From assembly GCF_006345805.1 (NCBI RefSeq), contig NC_042998.1:144460001-144524000 (forward strand): a stretch of 64,000 nucleotides of DNA, written 5' to 3'. The notes under the pieces are model-generated. The model saw only the letters and a program-made list of their open reading frames with translations. It was not told the origin of the DNA and did no database searches. Source of the stretch: Octopus sinensis. Taxonomy: Eukaryota. Made by a program: the position numbers and the translations under genes. Shown one piece after another: positions 7,285 to 58,889 of the stretch; positions within the stretch are counted from its first letter, which is position 1, and the number at the start of each line of letters is the position of its first letter.

Positions 7285-8261
7285 GAATAGCCAGATGCAA
7301 AATAATGAAGCTCAACCAAATCTGCCATCAAAGAATATGTCTGTTTCTCAACCTGCTGGTAATCAGGCTGCAGTTCCAGCTGAAACTGGCCAAAATGCAG
7401 GAGCAGCTGGAGGTAATACTATTTTAGGTATGAATTCTGCAAACAATGTTAATCAGGGTACCAATAACAAGGAAGTAATTGCTGCTCCCAACTCTAATGA
7501 TAATAAAGCAGGTGGGGTTGAAAATCAAGCAGCTGGTGCTCCTCCTATTAATAAAGATGTTGCTGGTGGAAATCCAGGAGCTGCTGTTCCTCCTACCAAT
7601 AACAATGTTGTTAGTGGAAATCCAGGAGCTGTTGTCCTTCCTGCCGATAATGCAGTTGGTGGAAATCCAGGAGCTGGTGCTCTTCCTGCCAATAACGATG
7701 TTCCTGCTGGAAACCCAGGAGCTGTTGTCCCTCCTGTTAATAATGATATTGCTGGTGAAAATCCAGGAGCTGGTGTTCCTCCTGCCAATAACGATGTTGC
7801 TGGTGGAAATCAAGGAGCTGTTGTCCCTCCTGCCATCAATAATGATGGTGGTGCTCCAGTCAATCAAGATGTTGGCGCTGGAGATCCAAAAATTATTCTG
7901 CCACAGAACAATGATGCTGCTATAGGAAATCTGGGACCTGTTGTTCCTCTTCTCAATAATAATAATGAAGGTGGTGATGGTGTTGGTAACGGTCTAGATG
8001 GTGTTATTGGTATGGCTGAAAAGTTGAAAGAACAGGACGTTGCTGGCGGCAAGCTCACTCCTACAGAACCCTCCCATATCAATGGCATGCCTGCTGGAGC
8101 TGCATTTAATGACAATTTTATTATCAACCAACCTAAAATAGAATCTAAGGAACCTAAAACTGGTTTATTGGACATACTTAAAAATAACAATATTTTATTT
8201 GAAAACCAATACAAAACTGCTCCGAGCATCAACAATCCTAATCTACTTGCTGCACAGGATG
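7285..8261 (+). CDS. Large internal coding exon (977 nt) of an unidentified host gene; Asn/Gly/Pro/Ala/Val-rich low-complexity segment with 15-16 aa repeats
   Basis: Long polypyrimidine tract ending cactag at 7284; open frame through ORF 7295-8272; donor GAT G|gtaagt at 8261/8262. Starts in phase 2 and ends in phase 1; the N-terminal exons lie outside the window. Confidence 0.88.
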
Positions 8262-9331: not shown

Positions 9332-9372
9332 AAAATAATCACTCGGTTTCGTAAAAATAAAAAATAAAAATT

Positions 9373-10112: not shown

Positions 10113-10121
10113 TAGCGGCGC
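10061..10121 (+). promoter_or_regulatory. -1 programmed ribosomal frameshift signal (G GGA AAC plus H-type pseudoknot)
   Basis: Heptamer in the gag frame with pol in the -1 frame; 7-nt spacer; stem 1 GGGAGACTAC/GTAGTTGTCCC; stem 2 GCGCCG (10086-10091)/CGGCGC (10116-10121). Confidence 0.85.
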
Positions 10122-12899: not shown

Positions 12900-12935
12900 G
12901 GAAGCCGGTTCAGTGATCTATAGATCAGGGGGGCG

Positions 12936-13211
12936 TGTGGTGTGGTGATGAGGGAGTGTGACAGAGAGGGAGGGAGCGGAAGTGGGTCTTGCAGGTCTCG
13001 CAGGGCGCATGCGCCGGCGGAAGCGGAAGCGAGAGACAGAATGCACGTGCGGCATCGACCAGGGCGGTCAGACTCGAGAACGACGCCAAGACGACAAGAC
13101 GCTAGCAAGTTGGCTCAAGGCGAATCCGGCTTCATCTCTGCAGGTAAGACCAAATTACACTTCTAATTCTTTTCCTTGTTCTGTTACGCTCCTTTCACCA
13201 CACTTATCACA
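12936..13211 (+). repeat. 3' LTR
   Basis: Direct repeat of 9044-9319, preceded by a polypurine tract and followed by the TSD ATTGC. Confidence 0.97.
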
Positions 13212-29090: not shown

Positions 29091-30140
29091 TCTCTATTGT
29101 AATGTGAAAGTAGTCTGTCCTATATATGTATATATACTTTCAGTTTGAAAGTAGTCTTTCCTATATATATATATTTATGCATTCCAAAACCGGGTTACAG
29201 ATTTTGACGTATGGGGTATCAAAAGATTCAGTACTATTTTGGCTACAAATTAATTTCCATTCACATATTTGCATTTCAAAAATTTAACATTATAATCTTT
29301 TTCATAAATCAACTATCATAAACATTTTATACAATGTCACATTTTCTATGTGTGTCTACCTTAAAAGACATTAATCATCACGACACACACCATCACTCAC
29401 TCACTCTCTCTCTTTTTCATTCTCTTTCTCTCTTGCACACACACGCGTCCATTTTATATGGACTTACATACATCTTTCACTTCCTTTCTCTGTCCTTTTC
29501 GCTTATTGTGTTATTAAAGTTCGTTATCCATCAATTATCCTTATTGAGAAGATACCTGGTCTCACCTATTTCCTGGAGAGATACCCAGTCTCACCTATTT
29601 CCTGGCCAAAATCCTTCAGACAGGCATGATATCATATTCAGAGTGTTTCACCTTAAGCTTAAGAAAATGATGGATGTTATTAGGCATGGACAACTTTTTG
29701 GACCAGTACGGTGTTTCATGTACACCATTGAACGGCAGAAGAGGGGACTTCCACATGCCCATATTCTCCTTTGGCTTCAAAACAAGCTCATGTCGACTGA
29801 TGTTGATTCCATTATCAGTGCTGAATTGCCAAATCCCCAAGGAGAACCAGTCCTTTTTCATATCATTAAAACCAACATGATCCATGGACTGTGTGGCTAC
29901 CTTAATCATAACTCTGCATGTATGGACAATGGGAGGTGCATAAAGCGTTACCCCTGAAAATTTATACATGAAACCAAGACTGGCAATGATGGTTGCCCTT
30001 TATACCATCGCAGGGCACTGCAAGAGGGTGGACATATAGCAACTATATCAATGGTTGATGGTCAAGATTTCAATATCGACAACAGATGAGTTGTGCCACA
30101 TAACAAGGTGCTTTGTAAAATGTTTTTAGCCCACATGTAT
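29091..30140 (+). mobile_element. Helitron fragment: A|TC 5' end and Rep (HUH endonuclease) coding remnant
   Basis: Peptide DIIFRVFHLKLK...YTIERQKRGLPHAHILLWL...ISAELP...MIHGLCG...C.KRYP...IDNR*VVP matches the Helitron Rep motif-2 region; ends in (TA)n. Confidence 0.88.
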
Positions 30141-32730: not shown

Positions 32731-33544
32731 AAAATTTTATTACTTAACTCTACTCCTCTATATCATTACCTTCAACTAACTTTTTTAGCCACATCCCCCT
32801 ACCTCACATCATGGACATTTTTCTCCCCCTCTTTTTCCCTCCATCTTTTTTCTCTCACCCTCTTTTTCTTTCTCCCTCTTGTTCTCTCTTTCCCTTCAAC
32901 TAATCATGTGAAAGCATTACAATTACATACCCTCTACCTCACATCATGGGTGTTTCTCTCTCCCTCTTTTTCTCTCATTCTTTGCCATTCTCTTCAACTA
33001 ATCACATGAAAGCATTACGGACAGGCTAAGTAACATATGAAGAAGCAGAATTATTATAAGATGACTGGAATCTTTGAATAAGAATATCATTAAAAGTTGA
33101 AAGCTTCTTGAACCAACTTGCATGCTAGTACACAACCTCTGTAGGAGACATCATTCATGCCAACTTATACAACCATGGATTGATGCAATAAAATACATAC
33201 CCAAGCCACAACAGTTTTTCAGGTCAATTTCATTCAATACTTATGGCAGCCAGACTGTAAGTTGTAGCCAATTCATTACTTAATGCTGTCAGCCCTTCAA
33301 CCATCCACCACTTTGAGATGAACTAGCAACTACCATGTTGTGCCTGCTCAGTTAATCCCATTTAAGCTTGTATCATAGAACCAAGGATGATTCCAGGGAG
33401 GCTGGTGTTGAAAAAAAGTTAATTTCTTTCCAAAGATTTTTAACCAATATATTTTCATGAAATCACACACTGTTTTTATATTTCATGAAGCAAATGTGAG
33501 AATAATAATTTTTTTATATATATTATATTTTTTTCACTTTTTAG

Positions 33545-33838
33545 GTGTAAATGCACTTAAGAGCCTCAAGGAAGGTTTTGATAATATGACAGGATCAAGT
33601 ATAAACATAACTAAACCTGGGGTTCAGACTCCCAGTCAGCTGAGTAATAACACAGCATTTAGCATTAAAGCGTCAAATGCAGTATTGACGAGTCCAGTAT
33701 CTTCATCAGACAAGGGTTATTCTCTTTTGGCTGTCAAAAGTAATAAAACAGACAGCTCTGACCCAGGACCAGGATCTCCCCAAATGAAGTCATTCAATAA
33801 CTCCAATCTCATCAAATATTTGCAAACTAATTCCTCGG
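33545..33838 (+). CDS. Internal coding exon B1 (294 nt, phase 1-1), Ser/Thr/Asn-rich with six N-glycosylation sequons
   Basis: Acceptor tttttcactttttag|GT, donor TCG G|gtgagt. Joins in frame to the 7285-8261 exon (G|GT = Gly). Peptide VNALKSLKEGFDNMTGSSINITKPG...YLQTNSS. Confidence 0.85.
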
Positions 33839-34517
33839 GTGAGTCTGTGTAATATTGTTCTCTGACAGAATCCAAGCAATGTTTTGTCTCTCTCCATTTT
33901 TATCTTTCTCTCTGAGTCTCTCTTTTTCTCCCTTCGTCTCCAACAGGGGTATATCCTTGTATCTCTTTTACAGCAAGGCACCTATCTCTAACACTATGTT
34001 ATTCTTTTGAACTGCCATCAGCTAGCTCAAAGCCATCTTCCTCTATACTACTACTACTACCCTTCTCAGTCCATAGGACTTCGCTTTTATTTTGCAAGTT
34101 GCTTGGTGACCTTGCTCAAGCTGGTGTCATGAAAAAAAGCACGTTGTACACTCTGTAATGTGGTTGATGTTAAGAAAAGCATCTAACCATAGACACCATG
34201 CCAAAATAGACAATTGAGCTTTGCACAGTCCTCTGCTTGCCAGCTCTCCTCAAACCATTCAACCCATGCGAACATGGAAAATGGACATTAAATGATGGTG
34301 ATGATGATATATATATTCTTTTACTTGTTTCAGTCATTTGATTGTGGCCATAGTAGAGAACCACCATCAGGGTTTTAGTTTAAAAAATTGACCTCAGGAC
34401 TTATTTCTTAAGCCTAGTACTTATTCTATCAGTCTCTTTTGCTGAACCACTAATTCATGGAGGTGTAAACAAACCAACACTTGTTGCCAAGCAGTGATGG
34501 GGAGCCAAACACAAAGA

Positions 34518-34611
<94 letters not shown>

Positions 34612-34926
34612 AAAGGAGAAAAGAAAATGGAGTGTGGGCGGTTAATAATTGTTTATTAGAAACAGCACATTAATCATATTCACTTACAGCTGTTTCAGTT
34701 TATAGTCTGTAAATATTAAATATTATATCAGCCTGCTATAATGAATCCATAAACATACATAAAACATCCAAGGATATATTTTTTTCCTCTGAAGATATTA
34801 TGCTCAGGTATTATAAATTTAATATTTACTGAGAATTAACTGAAACAGCTGTAAGTGAAGATGATTAATTTGGTGTTAATAATAAACAATCATTAACCTT
34901 CTAATCTCCATTTTTTTTCTTCTTTT
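34612..34926. mobile_element. Foldback/MITE-like element with about 110-bp imperfect inverted arms
   Basis: Left ...ttcacttacagctgtttcagtt...taaatattaaa is the reverse complement of right ...tttaatattta...aactgaaacagctgtaagtgaa; TA at both ends. Confidence 0.78.
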
Positions 34927-35080
34927 ATATAAATATAAACTATATATTTTTATATATATACCTAGTATTTTAAGAAATTAATTTCCTTAAAAAACTAGGT
35001 ATTGAACCAGTATTTCCTTGGATGAAACCATTCCTTCACGAAATTAACACAACCTCTAATTGAATGCGTGTGCGTATATA

Positions 35081-35134
<54 letters not shown>

Positions 35135-35303
35135 ATGTATATACACACACACACATGACAGGCTTCTTTCAGTTTCTGTCTACCAAATCCACTCACAGCA
35201 CTTTGGTTTGCCTGAGGCTATACTAGAAGACACTTGCCCAAGATTCTACACAATTGAACTGAACCTGGAAGCAAATTTATTATCACCCAGCCATACCTGC
35301 ACC

Positions 35304-35338
<35 letters not shown>

Positions 35339-35847
35339 ATTGGTGAATTGAGGAAATGGAGCTGAACGCAGATTGAACAGAAATCGTTTTATTTCATTCT
35401 ACACGTGTTTCGAAAGGCACAAATTACCAAAATCCGATTGAATAATGGGACCATATTGTGTCTTTCTCTTCAGGAAGAAAAAAGGAAATCCGTTAGAGAA
35501 ACAAAAACAGAACAGAGGCGGAGCAAAAACCAAATCGAACTATGCTCCTAAGAGCCCATGGCGAAACTGTTTATCAGTGTATGCTGAGAACCGGTGGCTG
35601 AAGAATTCTACAGGTCAGGCATCGGTCAATCATGTGGGTGAGGGTGTATAGATGTTCTTAGTGACCGAGAATAAAGTTCTGACTATTTAAGGAATATTGG
35701 ATGTTTTATAAGGGGCGAGAAAAAAATCTACTTAGAGACGTGTGTGTGTGTATACTGTTCTATATATGTGTGTGTTGGCGTAGGGGTAGAAGTAGATGTT
35801 AACTTTTGATTAATCTACAACAAGATTATTCATCTTTCTATTTCACA

Positions 35848-35894
<47 letters not shown>

Positions 35895-36319
35895 CAAAAC
35901 AGGAAGTTGGAAACTTTTTTTGGTATTATTTATTCAGCATTACATAATTTACATTTACTAATTGGAATCAAAAAGTTGTACATGCTGGAATTTCCTATTT
36001 GAAATTCTTCGGACAGAAAATCACATCAGTATAACAACAGCAAATACATACTGGACTGTAATACTGGAATAAGCAGATGTGCTTCAAGAGGACACAATTT
36101 AGATTTTACCATACCTATATATATATATATATATATATATAAAGCAGATAATTTCATTCTTTTGCGAGAGGATTCATTCTCAGCACTGAGCCATCAGCCT
36201 CTCTTTACATGTGTGTGTGTGTGTGTATGTAGTGTGGGGTAGTCTTCTACTTGACTGGCTCCTGTCATCTGGCCTACCCATGCATGCATGCATGGTAGAT
36301 GGATGTTAAACAATGATGA

Positions 36320-36350
<31 letters not shown>

Positions 36351-36889
36351 CTATATATATATATATATATATGTGCATCATTCTAACTTTCGAATGATAC
36401 CATCCCATTGGCTGCATTAACAGGCCAATATTCTCCTCAGTTGGTAGGCTAGTCTGTCAAGGGATTATCCATTTACAGCTGAATGAACTGGAGCAACGTG
36501 AAATTAATTGTTTTGCACTAGAACACATTTCATCATCACTGCATTTACATCTGTTTAGGTTCTACTCTAGTGTTCCACATCCACCTGTATAAAATGCAGG
36601 GCAGCCATGAATCTCCCCACAACAGTAAACCAGTTCCTGCCACCCCCATCCCAGGTGCTGAGGAATGAAAGTGACCATTTTATCTCATATTCCGTCTCAG
36701 ATTTTAGGGGTCTTTAGTTTGGAGCATTACTTGGTCACTTCATTTGTACTGGTGCCATAAAGAATCCCTCAGTACTCACTGTAAAGTGGTTGGCATTAGG
36801 AAGTGGATCCAGCTGGAGAGATCATGCCACAGCTGAGACGCTGGAGCAAGGCATGGTCCTCCAACCCAATTCAGCATAAAAACAGATGT

Positions 36890-37540
36890 GAAATGATGAT
36901 GATGCTAATGATATTCTTCTTTGTCTTGATTGTCACCTCATAATCAAATATGATTTGGTAGCAGAAGAGTTTTTCATTAAGTGAGGGAATTTTATCAGTG
37001 ATGTTTTTATTTTTCATGAAATTGAAGACCAAAGGTACAAGTATTGCAGAAATCTGTTGATATTCTTTGTATAGTGGATTCTGCTCTAGTCTCTTCTCTC
37101 TTCTTGTTGAAAACCATGGCATTGTGGATCTAGCTTCTCCTTATTGTTTTTTTCCAGTTGACTCTTCAACATTTACCTTCTTCATTTGCTTCATGTTCCT
37201 GTTGCATTCATTACACATTTTTTTATCACCGTCATATTTCATACAGATTTTATTTAATCTAACTTTTATATACTGAAACCCTCTATTGCTAACAGGATCA
37301 AAAGTTTGTTGAACTATCTTGACTCTGTGTACACTTTAACCACAAACCGATATACTTTCACTTGAACAGCTCCCCTCTCCAAAGATCTCAATTACGGGAA
37401 AGAACATCTCTGTTACTTCATGTAGTCCACATGAACAGTTCATAGTCTTTGTTTTTACAGTAGCAGTTGCTAGTAACAACTCTGGAGTATTTAGAATATG
37501 TCAAGTTCACATTTCCTGTGAGTGTATATCATTTTTATAA
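36890..37540 (-). mobile_element. Possible BEL/Pao LTR-retrotransposon pol relic
   Basis: Fragments ELLLATATVK, MPW...EKRLEQNPLYKEYQQI resemble the BEL protease and pre-RT regions; heavily degraded. Confidence 0.35.
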
Positions 37541-37685
37541 GTAATGTTTGCACTGATTTCACAGAAATTAATTTTTATCTACTTTCCAGTTCCTGAATAA
37601 TCAAAGTAACAGCTGCAATCAGTGACTATAAAACTGCTTTTAACTTATTCAAACAAGTCACATATTTAGAAATGGCATTTTCTTT

Positions 37686-38126
37686 TACTGTTCTTGTTAA
37701 CATATTTCTAGTGAAATACACCTACCTTTGTTTCAATTGATTTTGAAAATATTGAAGAAAAATAACTTTGTTACAATTAACCTTTAAGCATTCAGGTTAC
37801 TCTGTCAAATGTAATGCTTCTTTATTCACATTGTTTTGAATTAATCATGCATTATCTTGTGGCTTCAAGATTTTGATGACATGATTAATTTTTTAGAATG
37901 ATGTAAGGTAGGTGTGAAAGGCTAGATCTGGTTGGTTTCAACATAAAACAGGTAGAATATTTGGGCTGGATATGGCCTGTTTAAATGTTTCATGGTTAAG
38001 CTATTGTTGAGAACAGAAATTAATGTAAAATTTTGATGGAAGATTTCAATTTAGATCATGTTAAATATGAAGCTTGTATCATAGAACCAGGGATGGTCCC
38101 AAGGAGGATGGTATCAAAAGAATTAA
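37686..38126. mobile_element. piggyBac-type MITE family B containing a nested family A copy (37781-37995) at a duplicated TTAA
   Basis: The B halves match the uninterrupted B copy at about 58669-58889; the insert is flanked by TTAA at 37777-37780 and 37996-37999. Confidence 0.75.
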
Positions 38127-38246
38127 TTTCTTCCCAAAGATTTTTAACCAATATATTTTCATGAAATCACACGCTATTTTTATATTTCCTGAAGCAAATG
38201 TGAGAATAATAATTTTTTTTTATATTGTATTTATTTCACTTTTTAG

Positions 38247-38537
38247 GTGTAAATGCACTTAAGAGCCTCAAGGAAGGTTTTGATAGTATGACAGGATCAA
38301 GTATAAACATAACTAAACCTGGGGTTCAGACTCCCAGTCAGCTGAGTAATAACACAGCATTTAGCATTAAAGCGTCAAATGCAGTATTGAGTCCAGTATC
38401 TTCATCAGACAAGGGTTATTCTCTTTTGGCTGTCAAAAGTAATAAAACAGACAGCTCTGACCCAGGACCAGGATCTCCCCAAATGAAGTCAATCAATAAC
38501 TCCAATCTCATCAAATATTTGCAAACTAATTCCTCGG
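38247..38537 (+). CDS. Internal coding exon B2 (291 nt, phase 1-1), tandem duplicate of B1
   Basis: Same acceptor and donor as B1; differs from it only by N>S, F>I and one 3-nt deletion (LTS>LS); frame intact. Confidence 0.82.
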
Positions 38538-41500
38538 GTGAGTCTGTGTAATATTGTTGTTCTCTGACAGAATCTAAATAATGCTACACACGCAGACAGA
38601 CAGACAGACAGACAGACACACACACACACACACACACACACACCACACACACACACACAACTAGATAAATTTATTCTTCTGCAAGAGTATTCCTTGTCAA
38701 CACTTAGCCATCAACCTCTCTATACATGTTTGTAAGTTCAGTTCCCATGTTTTGAGTATTACTTTCTTTACTCACTTCCTGGACAACCAAGTGGGATTCT
38801 AAGATGTGAGGACCTAGATTAAGTAGCAGCAAATATTGCCCTGAATGGCACTATCACTGTAAAACTTTACGTATGATTTGCCAAACAAGCTACAACATAT
38901 ATATTGGTGACACAATATAATGCCTGTATGTGTATGTCTGTTTGTGTAAGTGGACAGAGCATGGCCAAATAGTTAAGAATTTTGGCTTGTTATTACAAGG
39001 GCCTAAGTTCAATTCTACTCTAGACCACATTGGACAAATGCCTCCTACCATTACCATAGGTTGCCCTAAGCCTCGTGAGTGGCATTGGGTAGATGGAAAT
39101 TTTCTGGAAGACTGTTGGCTGGATTATATCTCTAAATTTAAAGTCATCCTGTTTTTATGTTGTAAAGTTTCAACTTGATTCAGCCAGAAGCTACAGATCT
39201 GTGATATAGCTGAGTACATCACAGACCTGCTTAATCAAGCATTTAAATGCTCACAACCAATACTAATTTGTGTGTGTGTGTGTGAGAGAGAGAGAGAATT
39301 TCCAACCTTGAGAGACACAGGCATGGCTTTATAGTTGAGAATCTTGCTTCCCAATTACATGGTTTCAGATTCAGTATCAGTGTTTCACTTTGGGCAAGTG
39401 TCTTCCACTATAGCCCTGGGTCAACCAAAGTCTTGAGAGTGTATTTGGTAGAAAGAAACTGTTAGAAGCTAGTCAAATATATGTGTGCACAAAGCATGTG
39501 TGTGCGTGTGTTTATATACATTTTGTAAATGTATGCCTGTGTGTCTTCATATATAGTACATAGATTTTACATGTACATTCACTTTAACAACTGTTGACTG
39601 GAACACACAGTGTTGGTCCATTGTGTGTACATATATGACACATCTACATGTTTATATACACACACACACACACACACACACTCACATGTGTATCTTTTGG
39701 ACTTGTACGTGTCTAGTGACTGGGTCTGAAACCATGTATTAAAACTGAAGCAGCTATTTCCTGGGAGAACCATTTTAATAACACAAAACAATTAAATTCA
39801 CTTTAAATTGTATTTCATGATGTGTACAAATTTTTGTCACTCAGCTGTGGCCTAATTAATCACTTATGTAACTTTAAAGCCAATTAAAATATGTTTTTGT
39901 GTGTGTGTTTTCTGTCTGTTATTACTTATATTGCTATACTACCAATTTATATAATCTACCTAGCTACCTATGTATGTATGTATGCATGTATGGATGGACG
40001 GGTGCATGCATGCGTGTGTGCATAGTTCAGGGTTTGTATAATTGTATATAGATAAATATGTTAGGTAATCAAATTTCAACACAGTCCACTTTTCACATTT
40101 TATTTTATATTTTTGCAAGTACTTTCATGTTTTAAAACAATCTTCAGGTAATTGTTTATCTGATGGCATCAACAACTTATGTGCTTTACAACTGAGAATT
40201 ATCAGTTGTGAAGCACCTAAGTTGTTGATGCCATTAGATACACATTTACCTGAAAGATATACAATTACATGAAAGCACTTGTAAAAATATAAAAATAAAA
40301 TGTGAAAATTGGACTGTGTTGAAATTTTATTGCTGTACATGTACACACACACAGACATATACAACCACATGCACACACACATCCATCCATAGTTCACCTT
40401 TATATATATATATATATAAGTGAAATGTTGTTGTGCTTGTGAAAATTAATATGTATACTTCACTGCAACTTTGCTATATATCTATTAAATATTTTATGTA
40501 AGTTTGTGTGTATGTATTATCAGTATTGTGTTGCATTCACTTTGCATGGTTTCCAATAGAGTCCATAAACTGCTTGATGCATGCAGCATGAGATGGTGAA
40601 TGCCTTTTATTCATGTTCTTTTCTTTTTTTTTAATTGTTATTGCTAAGATTTTCGTTTTATTTTAGTTTTGTTCATTTGTTTCATTCTAATGTTTAACTG
40701 ATCAGTCTTTCTAATTTCAGCTCGATAAAAGTTTCCATAACAAAAAAAAAATTTCTGTTGAGTGCAAAACTTTTTATATAATGAGATGGGAAAATCAAAT
40801 TACCAGCATATTACCTCACCACTTTCACAGAAAATCTAGGTTGTTACTTGTACTGTATTTGAACTATGGAAACTATGAAAACTACACACAGACACACACA
40901 AAAATGTCTTCAAAAATAAACTTTTGAAAATGAAAGTCTGCTTTCAAAATACTGGGGCACCATTGCACCATTGCTATTGGTTGAAGCCTTACTGTATGTG
41001 AATCAAGTATACTGGGTTCTGTGCATATACTTTGGGACCCAGAAACCAAGTTAGCTTGTTTTTCTTAAAATTATTCATAATTCACATGACAGTACACATA
41101 TTGTATTTTTATTGGCTAATAAAAAGAGGATGTAAGGACTGATTTGCATATGATTAGTGTGTTATGTCACCAAAACTTTTATCAGCAAGGAGAGGGTTAA
41201 TAACTGTTAGATAGCCTGTGTATTGTATTAGCTCTATATATAGTACTATATATATAGTACGGTATGTAGAGGTTGTATACTATAATAGCTTAACATATAC
41301 ATAGCAGGATACATAAAGGTTGTGCTACTATATTAAATCTACATATGATTTATACTTCTATGTGTATGTAATGCTTGTATATGTTATCTAAATCAAGACA
41401 TCAAAGTTACTGCAAAGAGTTGTTTTAATATTTGTGCCATTCCTGAGAGCACTAACATGCTTAGCCAAGGTATTAAAACTGGTCATTAAATCTAGATTGC

Positions 41501-42062: not shown

Positions 42063-42097
42063 GACCAAATTCTAACATGAAAGAAGATAATTTAAAG
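42063..42097 (+). CDS. Short coding exon (35 nt, phase 1-0): (G)PNSNMKEDNLK
   Basis: Acceptor tttcatttcaattctag|GA, donor AAG|gtaatg; its phases bridge B1/B2 and the terminal exon. Confidence 0.75.
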
Positions 42098-42503: not shown

Positions 42504-42602
42504 GTTGGTTTCAACACTATAGAAGACAGTATTGACAAGATGCAGAAGAGTATGACCCTTGATGATGATAAAATGAATTCTTTAGAAAAGGGCCACTCAT
42601 AG
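42504..42602 (+). CDS. Terminal coding exon: VGFNTIEDSIDKMQKSMTLDDDKMNSLEKGHS*; followed by an AT-rich presumptive 3' UTR
   Basis: Acceptor ttcctcttctctattaacag|GTT in phase 0, matching the preceding exon; TAG at 42600-42602. Confidence 0.78.
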   Translation, partial: VGFNTIEDSIDKMQKSMTLDDDKMNSLEKGHS

Positions 42603-43586: not shown

Positions 43587-44543
43587 CATCATTATTGCAG
43601 TTATTACATCTATACATATCGATCACTCTCTCTCTCTCCCCCTCTATATCTCTCTTATTTTTCACTTCAATGTATTTAGTTTAAATGAAATTTTCTTAGA
43701 GAAAAATCACCAGGCCTTTCTAAAAAAGAACAAAACAAAATTTACATCCTATGTCCCTCAATATTTACGAAGGCATTGTGGTTAGGGTGTTGCACTCATG
43801 AATGCAAGATTGTGGCTTCAGTTTCTGGACAGGGCAATTCATTGTATTCCTGAGCATAATACTTCATTTCATGTTGCTCCAGTCCATTCAGCTGTTAAAA
43901 AACAATCAGATCACCCTGTAATGAACTGGCATTGCATTCAGTGGAGAATATTGTGATCTTGACCATTTATACACCATGGAAACAGTATAAGCAAAATGTC
44001 TAGGCATTGATTATTATGATGAGTTTGAAAAGCAAATATTTTTTTGCTTCTAATCTGTACTGAGCTATAGAGAAATTAAAGTATGCCATGGGACCTCTGA
44101 GTATTTTTGTGATCTTTGATTGAAAATATTGAGTTCCTAATTTTAATTTTGGCAATAGACAGTGATAAAAAGATTCCAACCCCAGTGTATCTTGCCTGGA
44201 GTTACTGTTTAAAGACTGCATTGGTGGATTATCATTCTACTTTCTATGATGTTACTATATTATTATAGAGCACAAAGGACATAGATTTTATCGTTTTATT
44301 TCATTATCTATTGGAAGTTGTGAAGTTGTTATGTTTGTTTTGCTTGTGTGTGTGTATTTTCCTTTAACCCCACCCCCATTGTTTTGTTTTTGCAACACAA
44401 ACAAATAAAAACAAAAAGATACCAACATTTCTTGTGAATGGTAACTAAACCCATTTAGCAAGACAAAAATATTTTCCCTTCAGAAAATAAAAATAATAAT
44501 AGAAATTAAATTTAGTATCCATTTGGAATCTCAATCTTTATAA

Positions 44544-44547
44544 GTGC

Positions 44548-44613
<66 letters not shown>

Positions 44614-44671
44614 ATGTATGTATATATATGTATGTGTATATGTATGTATATATATATATATTATATGTATG

Positions 44672-44702
<31 letters not shown>

Positions 44703-44725
44703 GTATGTATGTATATATATGTATG

Positions 44726-44761
<36 letters not shown>

Positions 44762-45145
44762 TATGTATGTATATATATATATATGTATGTATGTATATAT
44801 ATATATATGTATGTATGTATATATATATATATATGTATGTATGTATATATATATATGTATGTATGTATATATATATATATGTATGTATGTATGTATATAT
44901 TTTATATATGTTTTGTATGTATATATTTTATATATGTTATGTATGTATATATTTTATATATGTTATGTATGTATATATTTTATATATGTTATGTATGTAT
45001 ATATTTTATATATGTTATGTATGTATATATTTTATATATGTTATGTATTATATATATTATATATATGTTATGTATTATATATATTATATATATAATATAT
45101 ATTATATATATATGATATATATAATATATATGTGTGTGTGTGTGT
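44544..45145. repeat. Compound (TA)n/(TATG)n microsatellite grading into a 26-bp minisatellite
   Basis: Unit ttatgtatgtatatattttatatatg is repeated about 6 times between about 44885 and 45045. Confidence 0.9.
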
Positions 45146-45373
45146 ATAATGTGAGTTACTTAAAACAAAAAACAGGAGTTGAGTTTTTTTCTTGGGTTTT
45201 GGAAAGATGTTTTGGGAGTGGTTTTTTTAACTAATTCATATATATTTATAAAAGGTATGCATTTTGTATAAGAAATCATTTATGATGAGTCCCTGAAAGG
45301 GATGAAAACACTAAATAGTTTTTATTAAAATTCTGCCTTTTTCTTAATACGCAGGCATGTATGTGTACGTGTA

Positions 45374-45539
45374 CAGTTGTGGCCAAAAGTTTGGAACTTT
45401 TAAAAAAAATTAAAATAATTGTACCTAAAAGTTCAATTCGATTCAAATATATACAATGTAGAGATATACTTTACCTAATTACTGGACATTTAATTTGAAA
45501 ATTCTAAGTTTTTGACCTATGTTCCAAACTTTTGGCATC

Positions 45540-45544
<5 letters not shown>
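45374..45544. mobile_element. Tc1-like MITE (about 170 bp)
   Basis: ta|CAGTTGTGGCCAAAAGTTTGGAAC ... GTTCCAAACTTTTGGCATCAACT; the right end runs into a (CT)n(TA)n tract. Confidence 0.72.
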
Positions 45545-45585
<41 letters not shown>

Positions 45586-45616
45586 CTATATATATATATA
45601 TAGATATATATATATA

Positions 45617-45695
<79 letters not shown>

Positions 45696-45750
45696 ATATA
45701 TATATATATTTATATATATATATATATATATTATTATATATATATATATT

Positions 45751-45805
<55 letters not shown>

Positions 45806-45840
45806 ATATATATGTATGTGTATATATTGTGTGTGTGTGT
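45541..45840. repeat. (CT)n(TA)n(TG)n compound microsatellite
   Basis: Direct reading of the sequence. Confidence 0.95.
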
Positions 45841-47618
45841 TTAAATATAAGAGAATTATGTAACATGAAGATGGAAACACCAGGCTTTAATATCAAATCG
45901 CAACATTTATTTCTGTACTGGACACCAGTTTTAAGTTTCATTTATATATCATTACATAAAATTATTGTTTAGAATAACTATATATGATTCAGTGATAGGT
46001 GTGTTGGTGCTTTCTCAGGTGGAATGCACCAACACATAGCAGTTGCTGAATCATAACAGTTGCAAGGAAAATGTTGTCAGTATCTTCAAGGTTTCAGCTT
46101 GTTCACCTACATCAGAGTGGCTAGTGAAGTTGATTAAGCTGAAGCCTTAAAGTCTTTGCCACTCTTTCTCCTTGTAAAAGTATAATAGACATGTACTCAA
46201 CTAGAAAGTATTAAATAATACTTCTGTTTATTGTTAAAATGTTTTTATATATAATGTAACACAGTTGTAGTGCACCTGAACACTATACAATAAGTTCATT
46301 ATATATTGATATATCTGTGTGTAAAAGTGAGATCCAAGGATACAAATGTAGGAAGTTAGTGAACTTTGAGCAGTCGACAGAAGTATAAAAAACAACTTTC
46401 AGGAACAATAATGGTATCTTAACTTTGAATTTAATCCCAGATGACTATGAAATGACTTGGTAATGGTGAAGTGGAAAGCATCAACTTTCACTCATTGCTA
46501 TCATTGTTGTCATCATCATCATTGTTTTAACATCCATTTTATCATGCTTGTATGTGCCAGATGAAATTTGTTGAGGCAGATTTTCTACAGCAAGACAATA
46601 TTTCTTCTTTTAGTCCTTCAAGCACAAACAGCACAGTGCTCACAGCATGATTTCCTGGGAAGATTGCAAACAAATGATGCCACTGTCTTTGTATGATGGT
46701 GATGTTTGTTTACAATTTGCATACAATGCCAAGACAAGGATACATGAACAAACTCATACTCTGTGCACACACACACAAATATGCACATGCATATGCATTC
46801 AATCACGCACACACCTTTACATATACAACAGGCTTCTTGTCACTTTCTATCTACCAAATCCACTCTCAAGCCTTTGGAGTGGGCCAGAAAAAAAGGTGTA
46901 ATCTTCCTTTTCATTTCTAGAATTCAAAACAAATTTTGTAATAATAATTACTATTTTTTTGCTCTTCCCTGTTACACCCCTGATCCCCCCTCCCATTCTC
47001 TCTTCTAAAATGTGAGCAGCCATGTAGCTCCTCCACAGCAAGAAACCTATTCTACTCTGGTCCCTTTTCTCATACTTTAACCCCTCATACTCTAGTATAA
47101 AGTTGCCTCTTTCAAGGTTCGTTGTCTTGCAAGCTGTATGCTGACTTCATTAGTGCTGGTGGCTCAGAAAAAAGCACCCAGTATACATAATATAAAGTGG
47201 TTCGTACTAGGAAGGTCGTTCAACCATAGAAACCATACCAAAGCAGACACTGCAGCACAATGCAGTCTTTGGAAACATTGGATCCTATCAAACTGTTCTG
47301 CTCATGCCAACATGGAACATGGACGTTAAATGACAATGATAATGATGAAATTAATTTATTTGAAATGATTTCCTTTGTAAAAAATGTTAAGAAGTGTATA
47401 TTTATTTTTGATAGGGTCATTTTCTGAAGCTATTTGCTTCACTTACATTATGAAAATATGCCACAAGAAAAGCATAAATACCACAATTTTGTACCCCTAC
47501 TTTTTTTTCTACTCTCATTCCTGGTAAACCTGAGAATTTGTGCCTCATCAATTAAAAAAAACAAAAACAAAAATACAAAAACTGTTGGCTACCTTGATTT
47601 CATTGTTTTGTTACTCAA

Positions 47619-47794
47619 CCCTTTAGCATTCAGATTACTTTGTCTCATGTAATGCCTATTTGTTCACATTGTTTTGAATTAATTGTGCGTTATCTCATAG
47701 CTTGAAGATTTTGATGATGTGATCTTTTATTTTTAGAATGATGCTGTAGGATAAGTGTGAGAAGCTGGATCTGACTGGTTTAAATGCTAAAGGG
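47619..47794. mobile_element. piggyBac-type MITE, family A (internally deleted)
   Basis: CCCTTTAGCATT...AATGCTAAAGGG with TTAA on the right and TCAA on the left. Confidence 0.82.
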
Positions 47795-50083: not shown

Positions 50084-51030
50084 CTGACACATAGAGAAAA
50101 AAAAAGTTTTTTAAATAACGTATTTGAGTGTGTGTGTGTGTGTACATATATATATAGGTATATATATATATTGAGTGTGGAAGGATATATCATCCAGGCA
50201 GTTGACATATATATATCAGTTAAGTTCCAGTTAACAGCAAACCATAACGATCAGTATCTAACGTCTGTGACCACATTTAGTTGTTAGTCACTCGGTGAAT
50301 TCTTCTGATGAATAATTCTATGTTCTCTTTACTGGACAGTAAAAATTGTCTGGCGTGTACTCTTTATTATTATTAATTGTATATATATTGCTGAGGTATT
50401 TTGAAACTAATAACCTGGTGTAGAACTCAATATACTTATGCTTCAGAACGAAGCATTAGTCAAGTACAGACATTTAATAAGAAAATGAGACAAAGGAATA
50501 AACAATTACGAATTTCATTAGCTTACTGACCAATCATGTGTAATAACAAGAGAAGTAAATCTCTGTAGCATTAAACAGGATTTTATTCAATTTATATATA
50601 TATATATGTGCACACACACACACACAGGCATATATCTGTGGTGTTAAATTATTGGCCTGTTGCCCATGTAATCAAAGTCTGACAATTACTACAGCACAAA
50701 GGCTGTGCTCCTCCTGAGGAAGAAGCATTTCATGTTGCAGTTCCAGTCTGCTTTACTGACAGAAGATTAGTTTCACTCTTACTTGGACTGGAGAGAAGGG
50801 AGCATCCTACTATAATAATACTGGCTACAATAAAAATAACAAACATGGACATCATCATCATCATCATCATCATCATTTAACGTCCGCTTTCCATGCTAGC
50901 ATGGGTTGGACGGTTCAACTGGGGTCTGGGGAGCCCGAAGGCTGCACCAGGCCAGTCAGATCTGGGAGTGTTTCTACAGCTGGATGCCCTTCCTAACGCC
51001 AACCACTCCGAGAGTGTAGTGGGTGATTTT

Positions 51031-51300
51031 ATGTGCCACCGACACAGGTGCCAGACGAGGCTGGCGAACGGCCACGCTCGGATGGTGTTTTTATGTGCCA
51101 CCGACACAGGTGCCAGACGAGGCTGGCGAACGGCCACGCTCGGATGGTGTTTTTATGTGCCACCGACACAGGTGCCAGACGAGGCTGGCGAACGGCCACG
51201 CTCGGATGGTGTTTTTATGTGCCACCGACACAGGTGCCAGACAAGGCTAGCAGACGACCACGCTCGGATGGTTTTCTCGTGTGCCACCGGCACTGGTACC
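51031..51300. repeat. 62-bp tandem array (3 identical units, 1 diverged unit and a partial unit) inside the RTE 3' UTR
   Basis: Unit starts gtgccaccgacacagg at 51033, 51095, 51157 and 51219; no spacers between units. Confidence 0.93.
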
Positions 51301-51480
51301 ACAAAGATACAAATTTCATTGATGTTCATCTATTTTGATTTTGTTTGATTTTTTGATTTGATTTGATTTTGATTTTTGATTTTCACTTGCCTCAACAGGT
51401 CTTCACAAGTGTCACAAGAAGGAAGGTATGCACAGGTGGACTGACTACGTCCCAGGTAGGGGCCACGGGTTATGGCCTGA

Positions 51481-54400
51481 CTAGTCTTGCCGGGTCTTCT
51501 CATGCACAGCATACTTCCATAGGTCTCGGTCTCTAGTCATTTCCTTGGTGAGACCTAAAGATCGAAGGTCGTGCTTCACCACTTCGTCCCAGGTTTTCCT
51601 GGGTCTACCTCTTCCACAGGTTCCCTCAACTGCTAGGGTGTAGCACTTTTGCACACAACTATCTTCAGCCATTCTCGTCATATGACCATACCAGCGCAGC
51701 CGTCTCTCTTGCCCACCACAACTGACGCTTCTTAGGTTCAACTTTTCTCTCAAGGTACTTACACTCTGACGATTATGAACACTGACATTACACATCCATC
51801 GGAGCATACTGGCTTCATTTTTTGCGTGCTTACGCATATCCTCAGCAGTCACGGCCCATGTTTCACTACCATGTAGCATGGCTGTACGAACACATGCATC
51901 ATACAGTCTGCCTTTTACTCTGAGCGAGAGGCCTTTTCTCACCAGCAGGGGTAAGAGCTCTCTAAACTTTGCCCAGGCTATTCTTACTCTAGCAGTTACA
52001 CTTTCAGCACACCCACCCCCGCTACTGACTTGGTCTCCTAGGTAGCGGAAGCTATCAACTACTTCTAGTTTGTCTCCCTGGAACGTGGTAGAAGTTGGTC
52101 TCTGCACGTTTCCAGAGTTTATTTCTCCTGAGCATCTGCCACATACGAAAACTATCTTCCCAGTTAGCCTACCTTTGACATTGCTGCACCTCTTATGTGT
52201 CCATAGCTTACACTTGGTGCACCTTATAGAGTTTCTACCTACACCTTTTTTACAGATCGAGCCGGGCCATCTACCTGAAGTCGTTTGTGGTTGGTCCACC
52301 TTCCTACTTATTAGGACTTTGGTTTTGGCTAGGTTGATTCTAAGGCCCTTCGATTCTAATCCTTGTTTCCACACCTGAAACTTCTCCAGTTCTGATAGTG
52401 ACTCAGCAATTAGAGCAAGGTCATCAGCATAGAGGAGCTCCCAGGGGCATCCTGTCTTGAATTCTTCCGTTATTGCCTGGAGGACTATGATAAATAGGAG
52501 GGGGCTGAGGACTGAACCTTGGTGGACCCCAACCTCTACCCGGAATTCTTCACTGTACTCGTTGCCTACCCTCACCTTACTAGCAGCGTCTCTGTACATG
52601 GCTCGCACAGCTCTCACTAACCATTCATCTATCCCTAGTTTCCTCATTGACCACCAGATAAGGGATCGGGGGACCCTGTCAAAGGCTTTCTCCAAGTCAA
52701 CAAAAGCCAGGTACAAGGGCTTACCTTTGGCTAGGTATTTCTCCTGCAGCTGTCTTACCAGGAATATAGCATCAGTAGTACTTTTCCCTGACACGAACCC
52801 AAACTGCATATCATCTAAGCTAACACTCTCTCTAATTAATTGGGCTATAACCCTCTCCGTAACCTTCATTACCTGATCCAACAGCTTGATGCCCCTGTAG
52901 TTATTTGTATCTAGGGCGTCACCTTTACCTTTGTAGCAGTTGACTATTATGCTGCTACACCAGTCATTGGGTATGACTCCTTCGTGTATCACCTGGTTAA
53001 CTATACGGGTGACTATGCTATAGCCGACACTACCAGATATTTTGAGCATCTCTGCAGTAATTCCTGATGGGCCTGGGGCTTTCCCTGTCTTCATGCTTCT
53101 AATTGCCTTAGCTACCACGGGACTATCAACTCGGATAGCTGGTCCCTCTGTTGGGTCGACATTCGGCAGACTCTCTTTATCCCATTCATTTTCCTCATTC
53201 AGCAACCTTTCATAGTGGCTTCTCCAAGCCTCTCTCTTTGCATCCTCATTTAGCGCAAGTGAACTGTCATCCTTGCGAACACATTTCTCTCCTACCACAT
53301 CACGATTCTCTCTCACACACTGTCTTGCAACACGAAATACCTCAAGTCTTTCATCCTCACGGCGCAGGACATTGGCAAATTTTCTCTTATCTGCTTCCCC
53401 TCTGGCTAGATAGACCTGTCTCCTAGCTTCCCTTCTGGCAGTCTGATACACTTCCCTGCTACCCCCGTTCTTCCAGGCCTTCCAAGCCTGTTTCTTTTGT
53501 CTAATAGCCCAGTCAACAATATTGTTCCACCACCACGTTATTTTGGGTCTTAAAGGGACTTTGCACCAGCCACAGATCTGGTCAGTGGCTTTCAGCAGGT
53601 TGTCCCTCAGAAGCGTCCAGTTGTCTTCTACCCCATGCATAGCTATACCCCCTTCCATTTCGTCAAAGGCTTCAAGTAACATGTCTCTAAATCTCTGTCC
53701 ATTCGCAGGGTCTTTAAGCTTCCAGACCCTTCTTCTCCATGTCGGTCGTCTTCTAGTCACCCTCTTATTCCTGATCCTAAAGTCACTAACTACCAGTCTA
53801 TGTTGTGGGGTGCATTCTTCGCCTGGGAAGGTTTTGGCATTTATAAGCAGACATCTTTCCCTTTTTCTGGCAAGGATGTAGTCGATTTGGCTAGTATGCC
53901 GGCCCGATCGGTAGGTGACCAGGTGGCTTGTTGGTTTCCTGAAGTTAGTGTTGCAGACCATAAGACTATTCGCATCGCAGAACTCCAGCAGCCTGGTTCC
54001 CTCCTCGTTGCGGGAACCATAACCGTAGCCTCCATGTACGCCATGGAAGCCCCCAGCATGTCGTCCAACATGCCCATTGAAATCACCAGCCACAAAGAGA
54101 AGGTCCCTGTTGTTCGTCAATAAGGTGGTCTGCAGTAGGGTGTCATAGAAACTGTCTTTCTGTCCATCGGGTAGCCCTGGCTGAGGGGCATAGGCCGATA
54201 TAATGGTTGCTAATCTATTATGAAGTGCTATTCTAATCTTAAGTATTCTGTCACTTACTCTGATTACCTCAATTACTCTATCTACCCATTTCTCAGCAAT
54301 AAGTATACCCACACCACCAACCCCGTCAGTGTTCCCTGCCCAGAAAATCTTGTACCTGTGTTCCTTGCCTGTGAGGAACCTAGCAGATCCTCCTCTCCAC

Positions 54401-58668: not shown

Positions 58669-58889
58669 AACATTTTTGGTGCCATATTTCTTTTGAAATG
58701 CACTGCTTTTGTTGCATTTAATTTTGAAAATAATGAATTTAATAAAGTAACTTAGTCATTATTATGTTTTAATTTAGAACATAAATGAACATGAAATTTT
58801 GATGGAAGGTTTTTAGATCACTTTAAAACAAGTAGTTTGTATCATAGAACCAGGAGCAATCTCAGACAGGCTGGTATGGAAAGGGTTAA
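58669..58889. mobile_element. piggyBac-type MITE family B
   Basis: Ends ...tgtatcatagaacc...ggtatggaaagggttaa; homologous to 37686-38126 and 6334-6465 (inverted). Confidence 0.7.

What the first reader, a model, noticed from the sequence alone, without database searches (positions are those of the whole stretch)
33360..38590. Tandem exon duplication with 99% identical exons but about 10% diverged flanks and zero synonymous differences
Seen: a segment of about 520 bp is duplicated (about 33360-33880 and 38068-38590). The exons differ at 3 places in 294 nt (N>S, F>I, 3-nt deletion; none synonymous). By my manual alignment the 180 nt of upstream intron differ at about 18 positions. Protein-level selection cannot keep synonymous sites identical, so recent exon-limited gene conversion (possibly RNA/cDNA-templated) or nucleotide-level constraint is implied (inference). 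Both copies are phase 1-1, so inclusion of 0, 1 or 2 copies keeps the frame. The N>S change removes one of six N-glycosylation sequons (NMT), giving a possible glyco-length switch.
Basis: partly seen in the sequence, partly recalled or inferred. Interest (0 to 1): 0.7.

Follow-up and report, generated by a model that had tools for sequence, protein, structure and literature searches.

The report
Duplicated cassette exon in octopus gene
A real, optionally spliced coding exon of an uncharacterised octopus membrane-protein gene has been copied once within its own intron, and the two copies are far more alike than their flanks, most likely through ordinary DNA-level gene conversion; this is a tidy but unsurprising case of exon duplication.

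Summary
A block of about 515 bp occurs twice, at 33364-33881 and 38070-38583. Each copy holds an AG|...|GTGAGT-bounded, phase 1-1 exon (33545-33838, 294 nt; 38247-38537, 291 nt). The exons differ by 2 substitutions, both non-synonymous, and one 3-nt deletion. The flanks differ at 19 of 220 sites plus 3 indels (Fisher p = 5.5e-6).

The exon is genuine. An exhaustive protein search found one relative, Octopus bimaculoides LOC106875359, 90% identical. Its two annotated isoforms differ by exactly this 98-codon segment, so the exon is a cassette exon there, and only one copy is annotated. Mapping that protein onto the window gives the gene: exon X 7285-8261, B1, B2, exon C 42063-42097 and exon D 42504-42602. 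Including 0, 1 or 2 copies keeps the frame.

B1 gained the NMT sequon (S>N) and I>F; B2 lost one Thr codon. A transposon fragment that is complete only upstream of B2 marks B1 as the derived copy.

From the flank divergence, 4.0-7.3 synonymous differences are expected and none is seen (P = 0.0007-0.02). Exon-centred DNA gene conversion is my best explanation (about 0.55). RNA-level constraint on a regulated cassette exon is the main rival. Nothing requires an RNA template. This is a new member of a known kind, of low to moderate interest.

The parts
7285..8261 (+). Exon X of the gene: 977 nt, enters in phase 2, leaves in phase 1 (G|GTAAGT). It encodes an N/G/P/A/V-rich low-complexity region with 48-nt internal tandem repeats.
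   Evidence: tblastn of O. bimaculoides P0001 residues 203-541, 84% identity. Splice sites read. Internal repeats.
33364..33881 (+). Duplicated block, copy 1 (derived copy). Its left edge at 33364 is a breakpoint inside an interspersed repeat.
   Evidence: Repeat truncation shown.
33545..33838 (+). Exon B1: 294 nt, phase 1-1, six N-X-S/T sequons. It carries the derived S>N and I>F changes.
38070..38583 (+). Duplicated block, copy 2 (apparent source copy). The interspersed repeat continues intact upstream of it.
38247..38537 (+). Exon B2: 291 nt, phase 1-1, five sequons. It carries a derived one-codon (Thr) deletion.
37691..38126 (+). Interspersed repeat 'R1' (other copies at 58673-58889 and 6334-6472 on the minus strand), split by a nested SINE-like insert at 37768-38004. 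Its last 60-70 nt form the left end of the duplicated block.
42063..42097 (+). Exon C: 35 nt, enters in phase 1, leaves in phase 0, encodes (G)PNSNMKEDNLK.
   Evidence: tblastn; splice sites read.
42504..42602 (+). Coding part of the last exon (exon D): VGFNTIEDSIDKMQKSMTLDDDKMNSLEKGHS, with stop TAG at 42600-42602.
   Evidence: tblastn (94% identity to P0001 residues 650-681); sequence read.

Best explanation
The window comes from an octopus related to O. bimaculoides. It holds the 3' half of the orthologue of the uncharacterised gene LOC106875359.

The protein, as read from the orthologue, has a short basic N-terminus, one membrane anchor and a coiled-coil stretch. A long low-complexity region follows, and inside it lies a 97-98-residue module rich in Ser, Thr and Asn, encoded by one phase 1-1 cassette exon.

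In this species a segment of about 515 bp was copied once. The segment held that exon, about 110 nt of upstream intron with the tail of a repeat element, and about 45 nt of downstream intron. The copy landed about 4.7 kb upstream in the same intron and in the same orientation. B2 is the source copy and B1 the derived one.

The flanks then diverged by 6-15%. The exon cores were kept or re-made nearly identical. I think the most likely cause is one or more ordinary DNA-templated non-allelic gene-conversion events. Their tracts would be confined to the exon because only there did selection preserve long uninterrupted identity. After the last such event B1 acquired S>N (a new NMT sequon) and I>F, and B2 lost one Thr codon.

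Both copies keep intact splice sites and open frames. Transcripts with 0, 1 or 2 modules are therefore all in frame and would vary the length and glycan load of the presumably luminal stalk.

Shown: the duplication, the gene model, the cassette status in the sister species, the polarity of the changes, and the exon/flank contrast.
Inferred: gene conversion, the order of events, the topology, and the use of both copies.

The confidence of 0.55 refers to gene conversion as the cause of the synonymous identity. That this is a real duplicated cassette exon I hold at about 0.9.
For: - Duplication and differences.
- Real coding exon: a single strong hit, E = 1.2e-42, 90% identity, to O. bimaculoides A0A0L8GQU2. 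The isoforms XP_014778937.1 (697 aa) and XP_014778938.1 (599 aa) differ by exactly this segment.
- Gene model and phases.
- B1 and B2 share 8 residues that differ from O. bimaculoides. The three B1/B2 differences are each derived in one copy.
- Exon 2/291 vs flanks 19/220 substitutions, Fisher p = 5.5e-6; vs proximal flanks 8/160, p = 0.005.
- An exon/non-exon two-rate model fits better than an edge-distance model (lnL -76.6 vs -81.2). Adding the exon term to the edge-distance model improves lnL by 5.1.
- Expected synonymous differences under the flank rate and spectrum are 4.0-7.3, with 0 observed; P = 0.0007-0.02.
- A sharp change in difference density occurs just upstream of the exon: 3 substitutions plus 1 indel in 33515-33531, then 2 substitutions in the next 341 nt.
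- The repeat is complete only upstream of B2.
- Gene conversion that homogenises coding parts while flanks diverge is well documented (PMC2720389, PMC6993855).
Against: - The case for conversion over constraint rests on only about 4-7 missing synonymous changes.
- The two non-synonymous changes seen fit plain purifying selection (implied omega 0.12-0.20).
- The exon is a cassette exon in the sister species. Such exons can have 3- to 10-fold reduced synonymous rates and raised Ka/Ks (PMC2784930).
- The closeness of B1 and B2 relative to O. bimaculoides is equally explained by a duplication after the species split.
- I could not retrieve orthologous genomic DNA, transcripts or reads, so copy number in other species, use of both copies and assembly correctness are all untested.
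Confidence: 0.55

Rival explanations
1. No conversion. The duplication is as old as the flanks suggest. The exon stayed nearly identical because it is constrained at two levels: the protein level and the nucleotide level. The nucleotide-level constraint would come from exonic splicing enhancers or silencers of a regulated cassette exon, or, in coleoids, from sequence needed for A-to-I editing.
For: The exon is alternatively included in O. bimaculoides. Regulated or minor-form cassette exons show synonymous rates 3- to 10-fold lower and raised Ka/Ks (PMC2784930, read). This matches 0 synonymous and 2 non-synonymous changes. With a 3-fold constraint P(0 synonymous) = 0.09-0.27. The non-synonymous count fits omega 0.12-0.20. 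Editing-linked DNA constraint in cephalopods is published (PMC5850729). One of the two substitutions is an A/G, N/S difference.
Against: The intron right next to the acceptor, which is usually the most conserved part around regulated exons, holds the densest cluster of proximal differences (33515-33531). The protein segment is not strongly conserved between species: 8 of 97 residues differ. There is no unusually stable RNA structure in the exon or the block (z = -1.0, -1.8 and -0.4). A 3-fold constraint still leaves the observation in the lower tail.
Confidence: 0.25
2. Exon-limited conversion templated by spliced RNA or cDNA. Homogenisation would stop at the exon borders because the template lacks introns.
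For: The synonymous rate is below the intron rate, which is the criterion used to argue for cDNA donors in fungal ribosomal-protein genes (PMC6993855). The high-identity tract roughly coincides with the exon.
Against: The tract does not stop at the borders. There are 13 identical nt upstream. Downstream, 34 nt are substitution-free, with only a TTG slippage indel, although with 6-9% divergence this is weak evidence (P about 0.05-0.12, my calculation). A cDNA would offer only 294 nt of homology flanked by exon X and exon C sequence. DNA conversion confined by mismatch-rich flanks explains the same pattern without a special mechanism. Germline expression is unknown.
Confidence: 0.07
3. Assembly or polishing artefact. 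The two exon cores were made alike by read mis-mapping during polishing, or the duplicate is a mis-assembly.
For: None from the sequence. It cannot be excluded without reads.
Against: Three differences survive inside the exons. The flank differences are interspersed and the junctions of the two copies differ. The 4.2-kb spacer is unique sequence with its own repeats. That pattern does not fit a haplotig-type false duplication or a collapse.
Confidence: 0.05
4. Chance. Ordinary protein-level purifying selection with neutral synonymous sites, and the lack of synonymous differences is a sampling accident.
For: Small counts. With the lowest flank estimate the expected number is 4.0.
Against: P = 0.0007-0.02, depending on which flank is used as the yardstick.
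Confidence: 0.03

Closest known systems
Tandem or local exon duplication producing alternative exons (surveys of duplicated neighbouring exons in animal genes; the Dscam exon arrays are the extreme case, PMC3236188)
   Same: Two neighbouring, homologous, same-phase exons in one gene with intact splice sites, derived from an exon that is already alternatively used in a sister species.
   Different: There are only two copies, 4.7 kb apart rather than in a tight array. Both lengths are multiples of three, so joint inclusion is allowed. No feature enforcing mutual exclusion was found. The Dscam exons are highly diverged and show no gene conversion (PMC3236188), whereas these copies are 99% identical.
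Concerted evolution of paralogous coding sequence by non-allelic gene conversion with diverged introns and flanks (PMC2720389; fungal ribosomal-protein genes, PMC6993855)
   Same: Coding sequence, including synonymous sites, is much more alike than the adjacent non-coding sequence.
   Different: Here it concerns a single exon pair within one gene, not whole paralogous genes. The persistence of conversion across speciation could not be tested. A cDNA donor is not indicated.
Regulated cassette exons under RNA-level selection (low Ks, raised Ka/Ks; PMC2784930)
   Same: A frame-preserving cassette exon, with no synonymous but two non-synonymous changes between the copies.
   Different: That pattern is defined between orthologues across many genomes. 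Here it is seen between two paralogous copies, and the adjacent intron is not conserved.
GOLM1/GOLM2 (GP73/CASC4)-type type II Golgi membrane proteins; a resemblance recalled from memory only
   Same: The orthologue has a short basic N-terminus, a single N-terminal membrane anchor ending in ...LGFNYW, a coiled-coil stretch and then a long disordered acidic or low-complexity tail (read).
   Different: No sequence-family match was obtained: Pfam gave none and the PDB gave none. Homology is untested.

Membership tests
Local (tandem-type) exon duplication | Two neighbouring exons of one gene, on the same strand, with significant sequence similarity | tested here: met
   94.9% identity over 512 nt. 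Both copies match residues 541-639 of the orthologous protein.
Local (tandem-type) exon duplication | Both copies have canonical splice sites, the same phase and an open frame | tested here: met
   AG|...|GTGAGT, phase 1-1, 97 and 96 full codons open. The neighbouring exons are phase-compatible.
Local (tandem-type) exon duplication | The exon is part of a real transcript or protein | tested here: met
   It is present in O. bimaculoides XP_014778937.1 and A0A0L8GQU2 and absent from isoform XP_014778938.1. This is evidence from the orthologue, not from this species.
Local (tandem-type) exon duplication | Both copies are spliced into mRNA in this species | not testable with these tools
   No transcript data for this species could be reached (searches found nothing).
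Mutually exclusive exon pair | A mechanism that forbids joint inclusion: frameshift, an intron too short for splicing, incompatible spliceosome types, or competing RNA pairing | tested here: not met
   The lengths 294 and 291 are multiples of 3. The intron between the copies is 4408 nt. Both exons are GT-AG. Complementarity between the conserved flanks and the introns does not exceed shuffled controls.
Concerted evolution by non-allelic gene conversion | A tract of high identity embedded in more diverged homologous sequence, with synonymous sites included | tested here: met
   Exon 0.7% vs flanks 5-15% divergence, p = 5.5e-6. No synonymous differences vs 4.0-7.3 expected.
Concerted evolution by non-allelic gene conversion | Paralogues within a species are closer to each other than to their orthologues, although the duplication predates the species split | tested here: inconclusive
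   B1 and B2 share 8 residues that differ from O. bimaculoides. Only one copy is annotated there, and its genomic DNA was not retrievable because the gene range exceeds 100 kb. A duplication after the split explains the same pattern.
RNA/cDNA-templated conversion | Homogenised tract ends exactly at the exon borders | tested here: inconclusive
   The nearest differences are 14 nt upstream (33531). Downstream there is a 3-nt indel 15 nt away and the first substitution 35 nt away. The numbers are too small to decide.
Regulated cassette exon under RNA-level selection | Exon is alternatively included and frame-preserving | tested here: met
   The O. bimaculoides isoform pairs 697/599 aa and 682/584 aa differ by this exon. 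These are annotation models; inclusion levels are unknown.
Regulated cassette exon under RNA-level selection | Reduced synonymous rate between orthologues and conserved flanking intron | not testable with these tools
   No orthologous nucleotide sequence was available. Between the paralogous copies the proximal intron is not conserved.
GOLM1/GOLM2-like Golgi type II membrane proteins | Detectable sequence homology to the family | not tested
   There were no Pfam or PDB hits for the orthologue. I made no direct comparison with a family member. The resemblance is from memory.

The most novel reading that the evidence does not exclude
The exon cores are kept identical by something other than ordinary DNA conversion. 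One possibility is repair templated by spliced RNA or cDNA. Another is a coleoid-specific nucleotide-level constraint linked to A-to-I editing or to control of exon definition; one of the two substitutions is an A/G change recoding N/S. In that case a freshly duplicated cassette exon would be a natural reporter for such a process.
Probability: 0.08. Interest if true: 0.6.

Novelty: new member of a known kind. Interest (0 to 1): 0.27.

Why it matters
If confirmed, this is a clean and young example of how a cassette exon is duplicated in a cephalopod gene. The source and the derived copy can be told apart, and so can the derived changes in each, including the gain of one glycosylation sequon. 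It could serve as a small test case for two questions: whether gene conversion or RNA-level constraint keeps duplicated exons alike, and whether module number tunes the glycosylated stalk of a membrane protein. It does not challenge current understanding. Exon duplication, conversion between close paralogous segments and synonymous constraint in alternative exons are all established.

Tried and rejected
- Word-index protein searches with the exon peptide and with exon X found nothing. Even a query 100% identical to the O. bimaculoides N-terminus did not return that protein. Only the exhaustive representative search did.
- Exact-product look-ups of the ORFs around B1, B2 and exon X in public assemblies found nothing.
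- The UniProt form P0001 is not on record.
- A degenerate-pattern scan of metagenome contigs found nothing.
- Pfam gave no family for the exon, for exon X or for the full orthologue. The PDB gave none.
- Rfam and the tRNA scan of the window found nothing.
- No third, degenerate copy of the exon is in the window (tblastn).
- A larger ancient tandem unit is rejected. There is no homology between the 4.2-kb spacer and the sequence after copy 2, apart from dispersed repeats, and there is no second exon C.
- An 'edge effect' of conversion, with identity simply highest in the middle of the block, fits worse than exon membership.
- A docking/selector RNA-pairing search found only 12-13-nt complements, at chance level. 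A full duplex-energy scan timed out.
- dsRNA-like structure is not supported.
- A literature search for the gene identifiers returned nothing.


Full report
**1. The observation**

The region holds a direct repeat of about 515 bp. blastn of the window against itself gives 33364-33872 vs 38070-38574 at 94.9% identity over 512 columns. The repeat finder and MAFFT give the same picture.

Inside each copy is an open segment bounded by ...CACTTTTTAG| and |GTGAGT. These are 33545-33838 (294 nt) and 38247-38537 (291 nt). Only the frame at offset 2 is open, so both are phase 1-1 exons.

A base-by-base alignment shows:
- In the exon: A/G at 33584 (Asn vs Ser), a 3-nt deletion at 33687-33689 (one Thr) and T/A at 33793 (Phe vs Ile). 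None is synonymous.
- In the 181 nt upstream: 16 substitutions and two 2-nt indels.
- In the 43 nt downstream: 3 substitutions and one 3-nt indel.

**2. What the sequence belongs to**

The window is eukaryotic. It has long CA, TA and GACA microsatellites, many SINE-like repeats, an LTR retrotransposon and a non-LTR retrotransposon. One SINE looked to me like the abundant octopus SINE; that was from memory, and the protein evidence below bears it out.

Word-index protein searches with the exon peptide and with a large ORF at 7295-8261 found nothing. Pfam found nothing either.

The exhaustive search of 1.84 billion representatives with the 97-residue exon peptide found exactly one protein (E = 1.2e-42, 90% identity, residues 542-638 of 682). 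It is Octopus bimaculoides A0A0L8GQU2, gene LOC106875359, 'uncharacterized protein'.

Its cluster contains two pairs of isoforms:
- XP_014778937.1 (697 aa) and XP_014778938.1 (599 aa)
- the UniProt pair of 682 and 584 aa

Reading them, the long forms have ...LLAAQDG-[VNVLASLKK...LQTNSS]-GPNSNMKEDN... and the short forms have ...LLAAQDGPNSNMKEDN.... They differ by exactly this exon. So in the sister species the exon is coding and is a cassette exon. That rests on annotation models; inclusion levels are unknown. Only one copy is annotated there.

**3. Gene model in the window**

tblastn of the O. bimaculoides protein against the window, with the splice sites read, gives:

| Exon | Coordinates | Notes |
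|---|---|---|
| X | 7285-8261 | Residues 203-541, 84% identity; leaves in phase 1, G\|GTAAGT |
| B1 | 33545-33838 | Phase 1-1 |
| B2 | 38247-38537 | Phase 1-1 |
| C | 42063-42097 | Enters in phase 1 |
| D | 42504-42602 | Stop TAG at 42600-42602 |

The first 202 residues lie upstream of the window. In the orthologue they hold a short basic N-terminus, one hydrophobic anchor and a coiled-coil-like stretch. A Logan contig from another Octopus sample (L001, SRR11869394) carries the first coding exon.

The identity to O. bimaculoides (84-94% per exon) shows that the window is from a different but related octopus.

By the positive-inside rule, the N-terminus suggests a type II orientation. This would put the B module in the lumen, where N-X-S/T sequons can be used. 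That is an inference and was not tested. The architecture reminds me of GOLM1/GOLM2, but no family match was obtained.

**4. Anatomy and direction of the duplication**

The two copies share nothing beyond the 515-bp block. The 4.2-kb spacer and the sequence after copy 2 match only through dispersed repeats, and there is no second exon C.

The leftmost 60-70 nt of the block belong to an interspersed repeat, with other copies at 58673-58889 and at 6334-6472 on the minus strand. Upstream of copy 2 this repeat continues: 37691-38126, split by a nested SINE-like insert at 37768-38004. Upstream of copy 1 it stops abruptly at 33364.

So copy 2 sits in the ancestral context, and copy 1 is the derived copy, with a breakpoint inside the repeat. 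The alternative is that copy 1 later suffered a deletion at that spot. This is a local, same-orientation, intra-intron duplication rather than a strictly abutting tandem one. I saw no target-site duplication or transposon termini around copy 1.

**5. Polarity of the exon differences**

I aligned B1, B2 and the O. bimaculoides exon.
- O. bimaculoides has Ser (as in B2), has the Thr (as in B1) and has Ile (as in B2).
- So B1 acquired S>N, which creates the NMT sequon, and I>F. B2 lost one Thr codon.
- B1 and B2 share eight residues that differ from O. bimaculoides. This fits either a duplication after the species split or homogenisation.
- Sequon number is similar in all three (6, 5 and 6), but the positions have shifted. 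NTS and NIS in O. bimaculoides correspond to no sequon and to NNS here.

**6. Is the exon/flank contrast meaningful?**

Substitutions number 2 of 291 in the exon and 19 of 220 in the flanks (Fisher p = 5.5e-6). Against the proximal flanks only (8 of 160), p = 0.005.

Divergence is graded: about 15% in the repeat-derived 53 nt, about 6% in the next 128 nt and 0.7% in the exon. I asked whether this is just the centre-high pattern expected from conversion edge effects.
- A two-rate exon/non-exon model fits better than a logistic model on distance from the block edge (lnL -76.6 vs -81.2, with the same number of parameters).
- Adding the exon term to the distance model gains 5.1 log units.
- Adding distance to the exon model gains only 0.5.

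A higher identity of a coding exon is of course expected from purifying selection. The real question is the synonymous sites. Applying the flank rates and the transition/transversion spectrum to the exon's codons gives 4.0-7.3 expected synonymous and 10-17 expected neutral non-synonymous differences.
- Observing 0 synonymous differences has P = 0.0007-0.02.
- The 2 non-synonymous differences imply omega of about 0.12-0.20, which is unremarkable.

So the whole puzzle consists of roughly four to seven missing synonymous changes.

**7. Explanations**

(a) DNA-level non-allelic gene conversion centred on the exon. Close paralogous segments are commonly homogenised. Coding parts that are more alike than their flanks are a classic signature (PMC2720389, PMC6993855).

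Selection on the exon would preserve the long uninterrupted identity that conversion needs. The mismatch-rich flanks would limit tract extension. The tract therefore need not be 'exon-limited' by any special mechanism.

The abrupt change in difference density 14-30 nt upstream of the exon fits a tract boundary. So does the substitution-free 34 nt downstream.

(b) Nucleotide-level constraint without conversion. The exon is a cassette exon in the sister species. Regulated cassette exons are known to have synonymous rates 3- to 10-fold lower, with raised Ka/Ks (PMC2784930). With a 3-fold reduction P(0) rises to 0.09-0.27. Cephalopod editing-linked constraint is a further published source of such selection (PMC5850729).

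Three points count against this. The intron next to the acceptor is the least conserved part of the proximal flank. The protein segment changes readily between species. I also found no unusually stable RNA structure (z = -1.0 for the exon, -1.8 and -0.4 for the two blocks).

(c) RNA/cDNA-templated conversion. This is compatible with the synonymous rate being below the intron rate, the criterion used in PMC6993855. It is not needed, and the identity extending a little into both introns is mildly against it.

(d) Assembly or polishing artefact. This is unlikely given the surviving exon differences, the interspersed flank differences and the distinct junctions. It is untestable here.

(e) Chance, at P of about 0.001-0.02.

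My weights are: conversion about 0.55, constraint about 0.25, cDNA-templated about 0.07, artefact about 0.05, chance about 0.03.

**8. Splicing mode**

Nothing enforces mutual exclusion:
- Both lengths are multiples of three.
- The intron between the copies is 4408 nt.
- Both exons use GT-AG.
- Complementarity between the conserved flanks and the gene's introns does not exceed shuffled controls. The best are 12-13-nt matches, for example 33484-33496 with 37183-37195.

The donor regions are identical. The polypyrimidine tracts differ (TATTTTTTTCAC vs TATTTATTTCAC), so the two acceptors may differ in strength. That is an inference. Whether both copies are used cannot be told from the sequence.

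**9. Comparison with what is known, and verdict**

This is a new instance of local exon duplication of a cassette exon, with probable concerted evolution of the exon core. It differs from the Dscam-type arrays, which are diverged, mutually exclusive and show no conversion (PMC3236188). It differs from whole-gene concerted evolution only in scale.

The decisive data are all outside what these tools could reach: orthologous genomic loci, transcripts, reads and population samples. Exact-ORF look-ups and a metagenome scan found nothing.

Interest is low to moderate. The gene is real and the direction of change is now known. But the pattern is what established processes predict.

Noticed in passing
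window 9044-13212 (+): LTR retrotransposon inside the 25-kb intron between exon X and B1. Its 277-bp LTRs (9044-9320 and 12936-13212) are 99.3% identical, so the insertion is young. ORFs carry a zinc knuckle, an aspartyl protease, RT, RNase H and an integrase (9373-12899), spread over several overlapping frames.
   Followed up: partly
window 51481-54501 (-), and 3292-4244: Non-LTR retrotransposon with an intact 1006-aa ORF (endonuclease plus reverse transcriptase). An 87%-identical partial copy lies at 3292-4244. A tandem repeat of about 62 nt flanks it at 51022-51301.
   Followed up: partly
window 29334-29957 (+): Fragment of a Helitron Rep protein (Helitron_like_N, E = 3e-19) in the same large intron.
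   Followed up: partly
window 7501-7846 (within exon X): Exon X contains 48-nt tandem repeats encoding 16-residue N/G/P/A/V-rich units. Compared with O. bimaculoides it has a 12-residue deletion and single-residue indels, so this coding repeat region changes length between species.
   Followed up: no
window 37691-38126; 58673-58889; 6334-6472 (-): An unclassified interspersed repeat family. The copy upstream of B2 is split by a nested SINE-like insert (37768-38004; relatives at 913-1154 and 47607-47784). Its tail was carried along in the exon duplication.
   Followed up: partly
window 44000-46000: About 1.3 kb of TA/CA-type microsatellite sequence (GC 0.205 in the 2-kb composition window). It generates long spurious ORFs of Y/I/C/M repeats.
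   Followed up: no
L001 (Logan SRR11869394 contig, 1559 nt), 585-1145: Genomic contig from another Octopus sample that carries the 5' UTR and the first coding exon of the orthologue (90% identical to O. bimaculoides). The exon ends at a GTAAGT donor. It does not overlap the window.
   Followed up: partly
tool behaviour (vs 27): The word-index protein search failed to return the O. bimaculoides protein even for a 100%-identical 221-residue query. The exhaustive representative search found it at once. Negative results from the word index should not be read as absence.
   Followed up: yes
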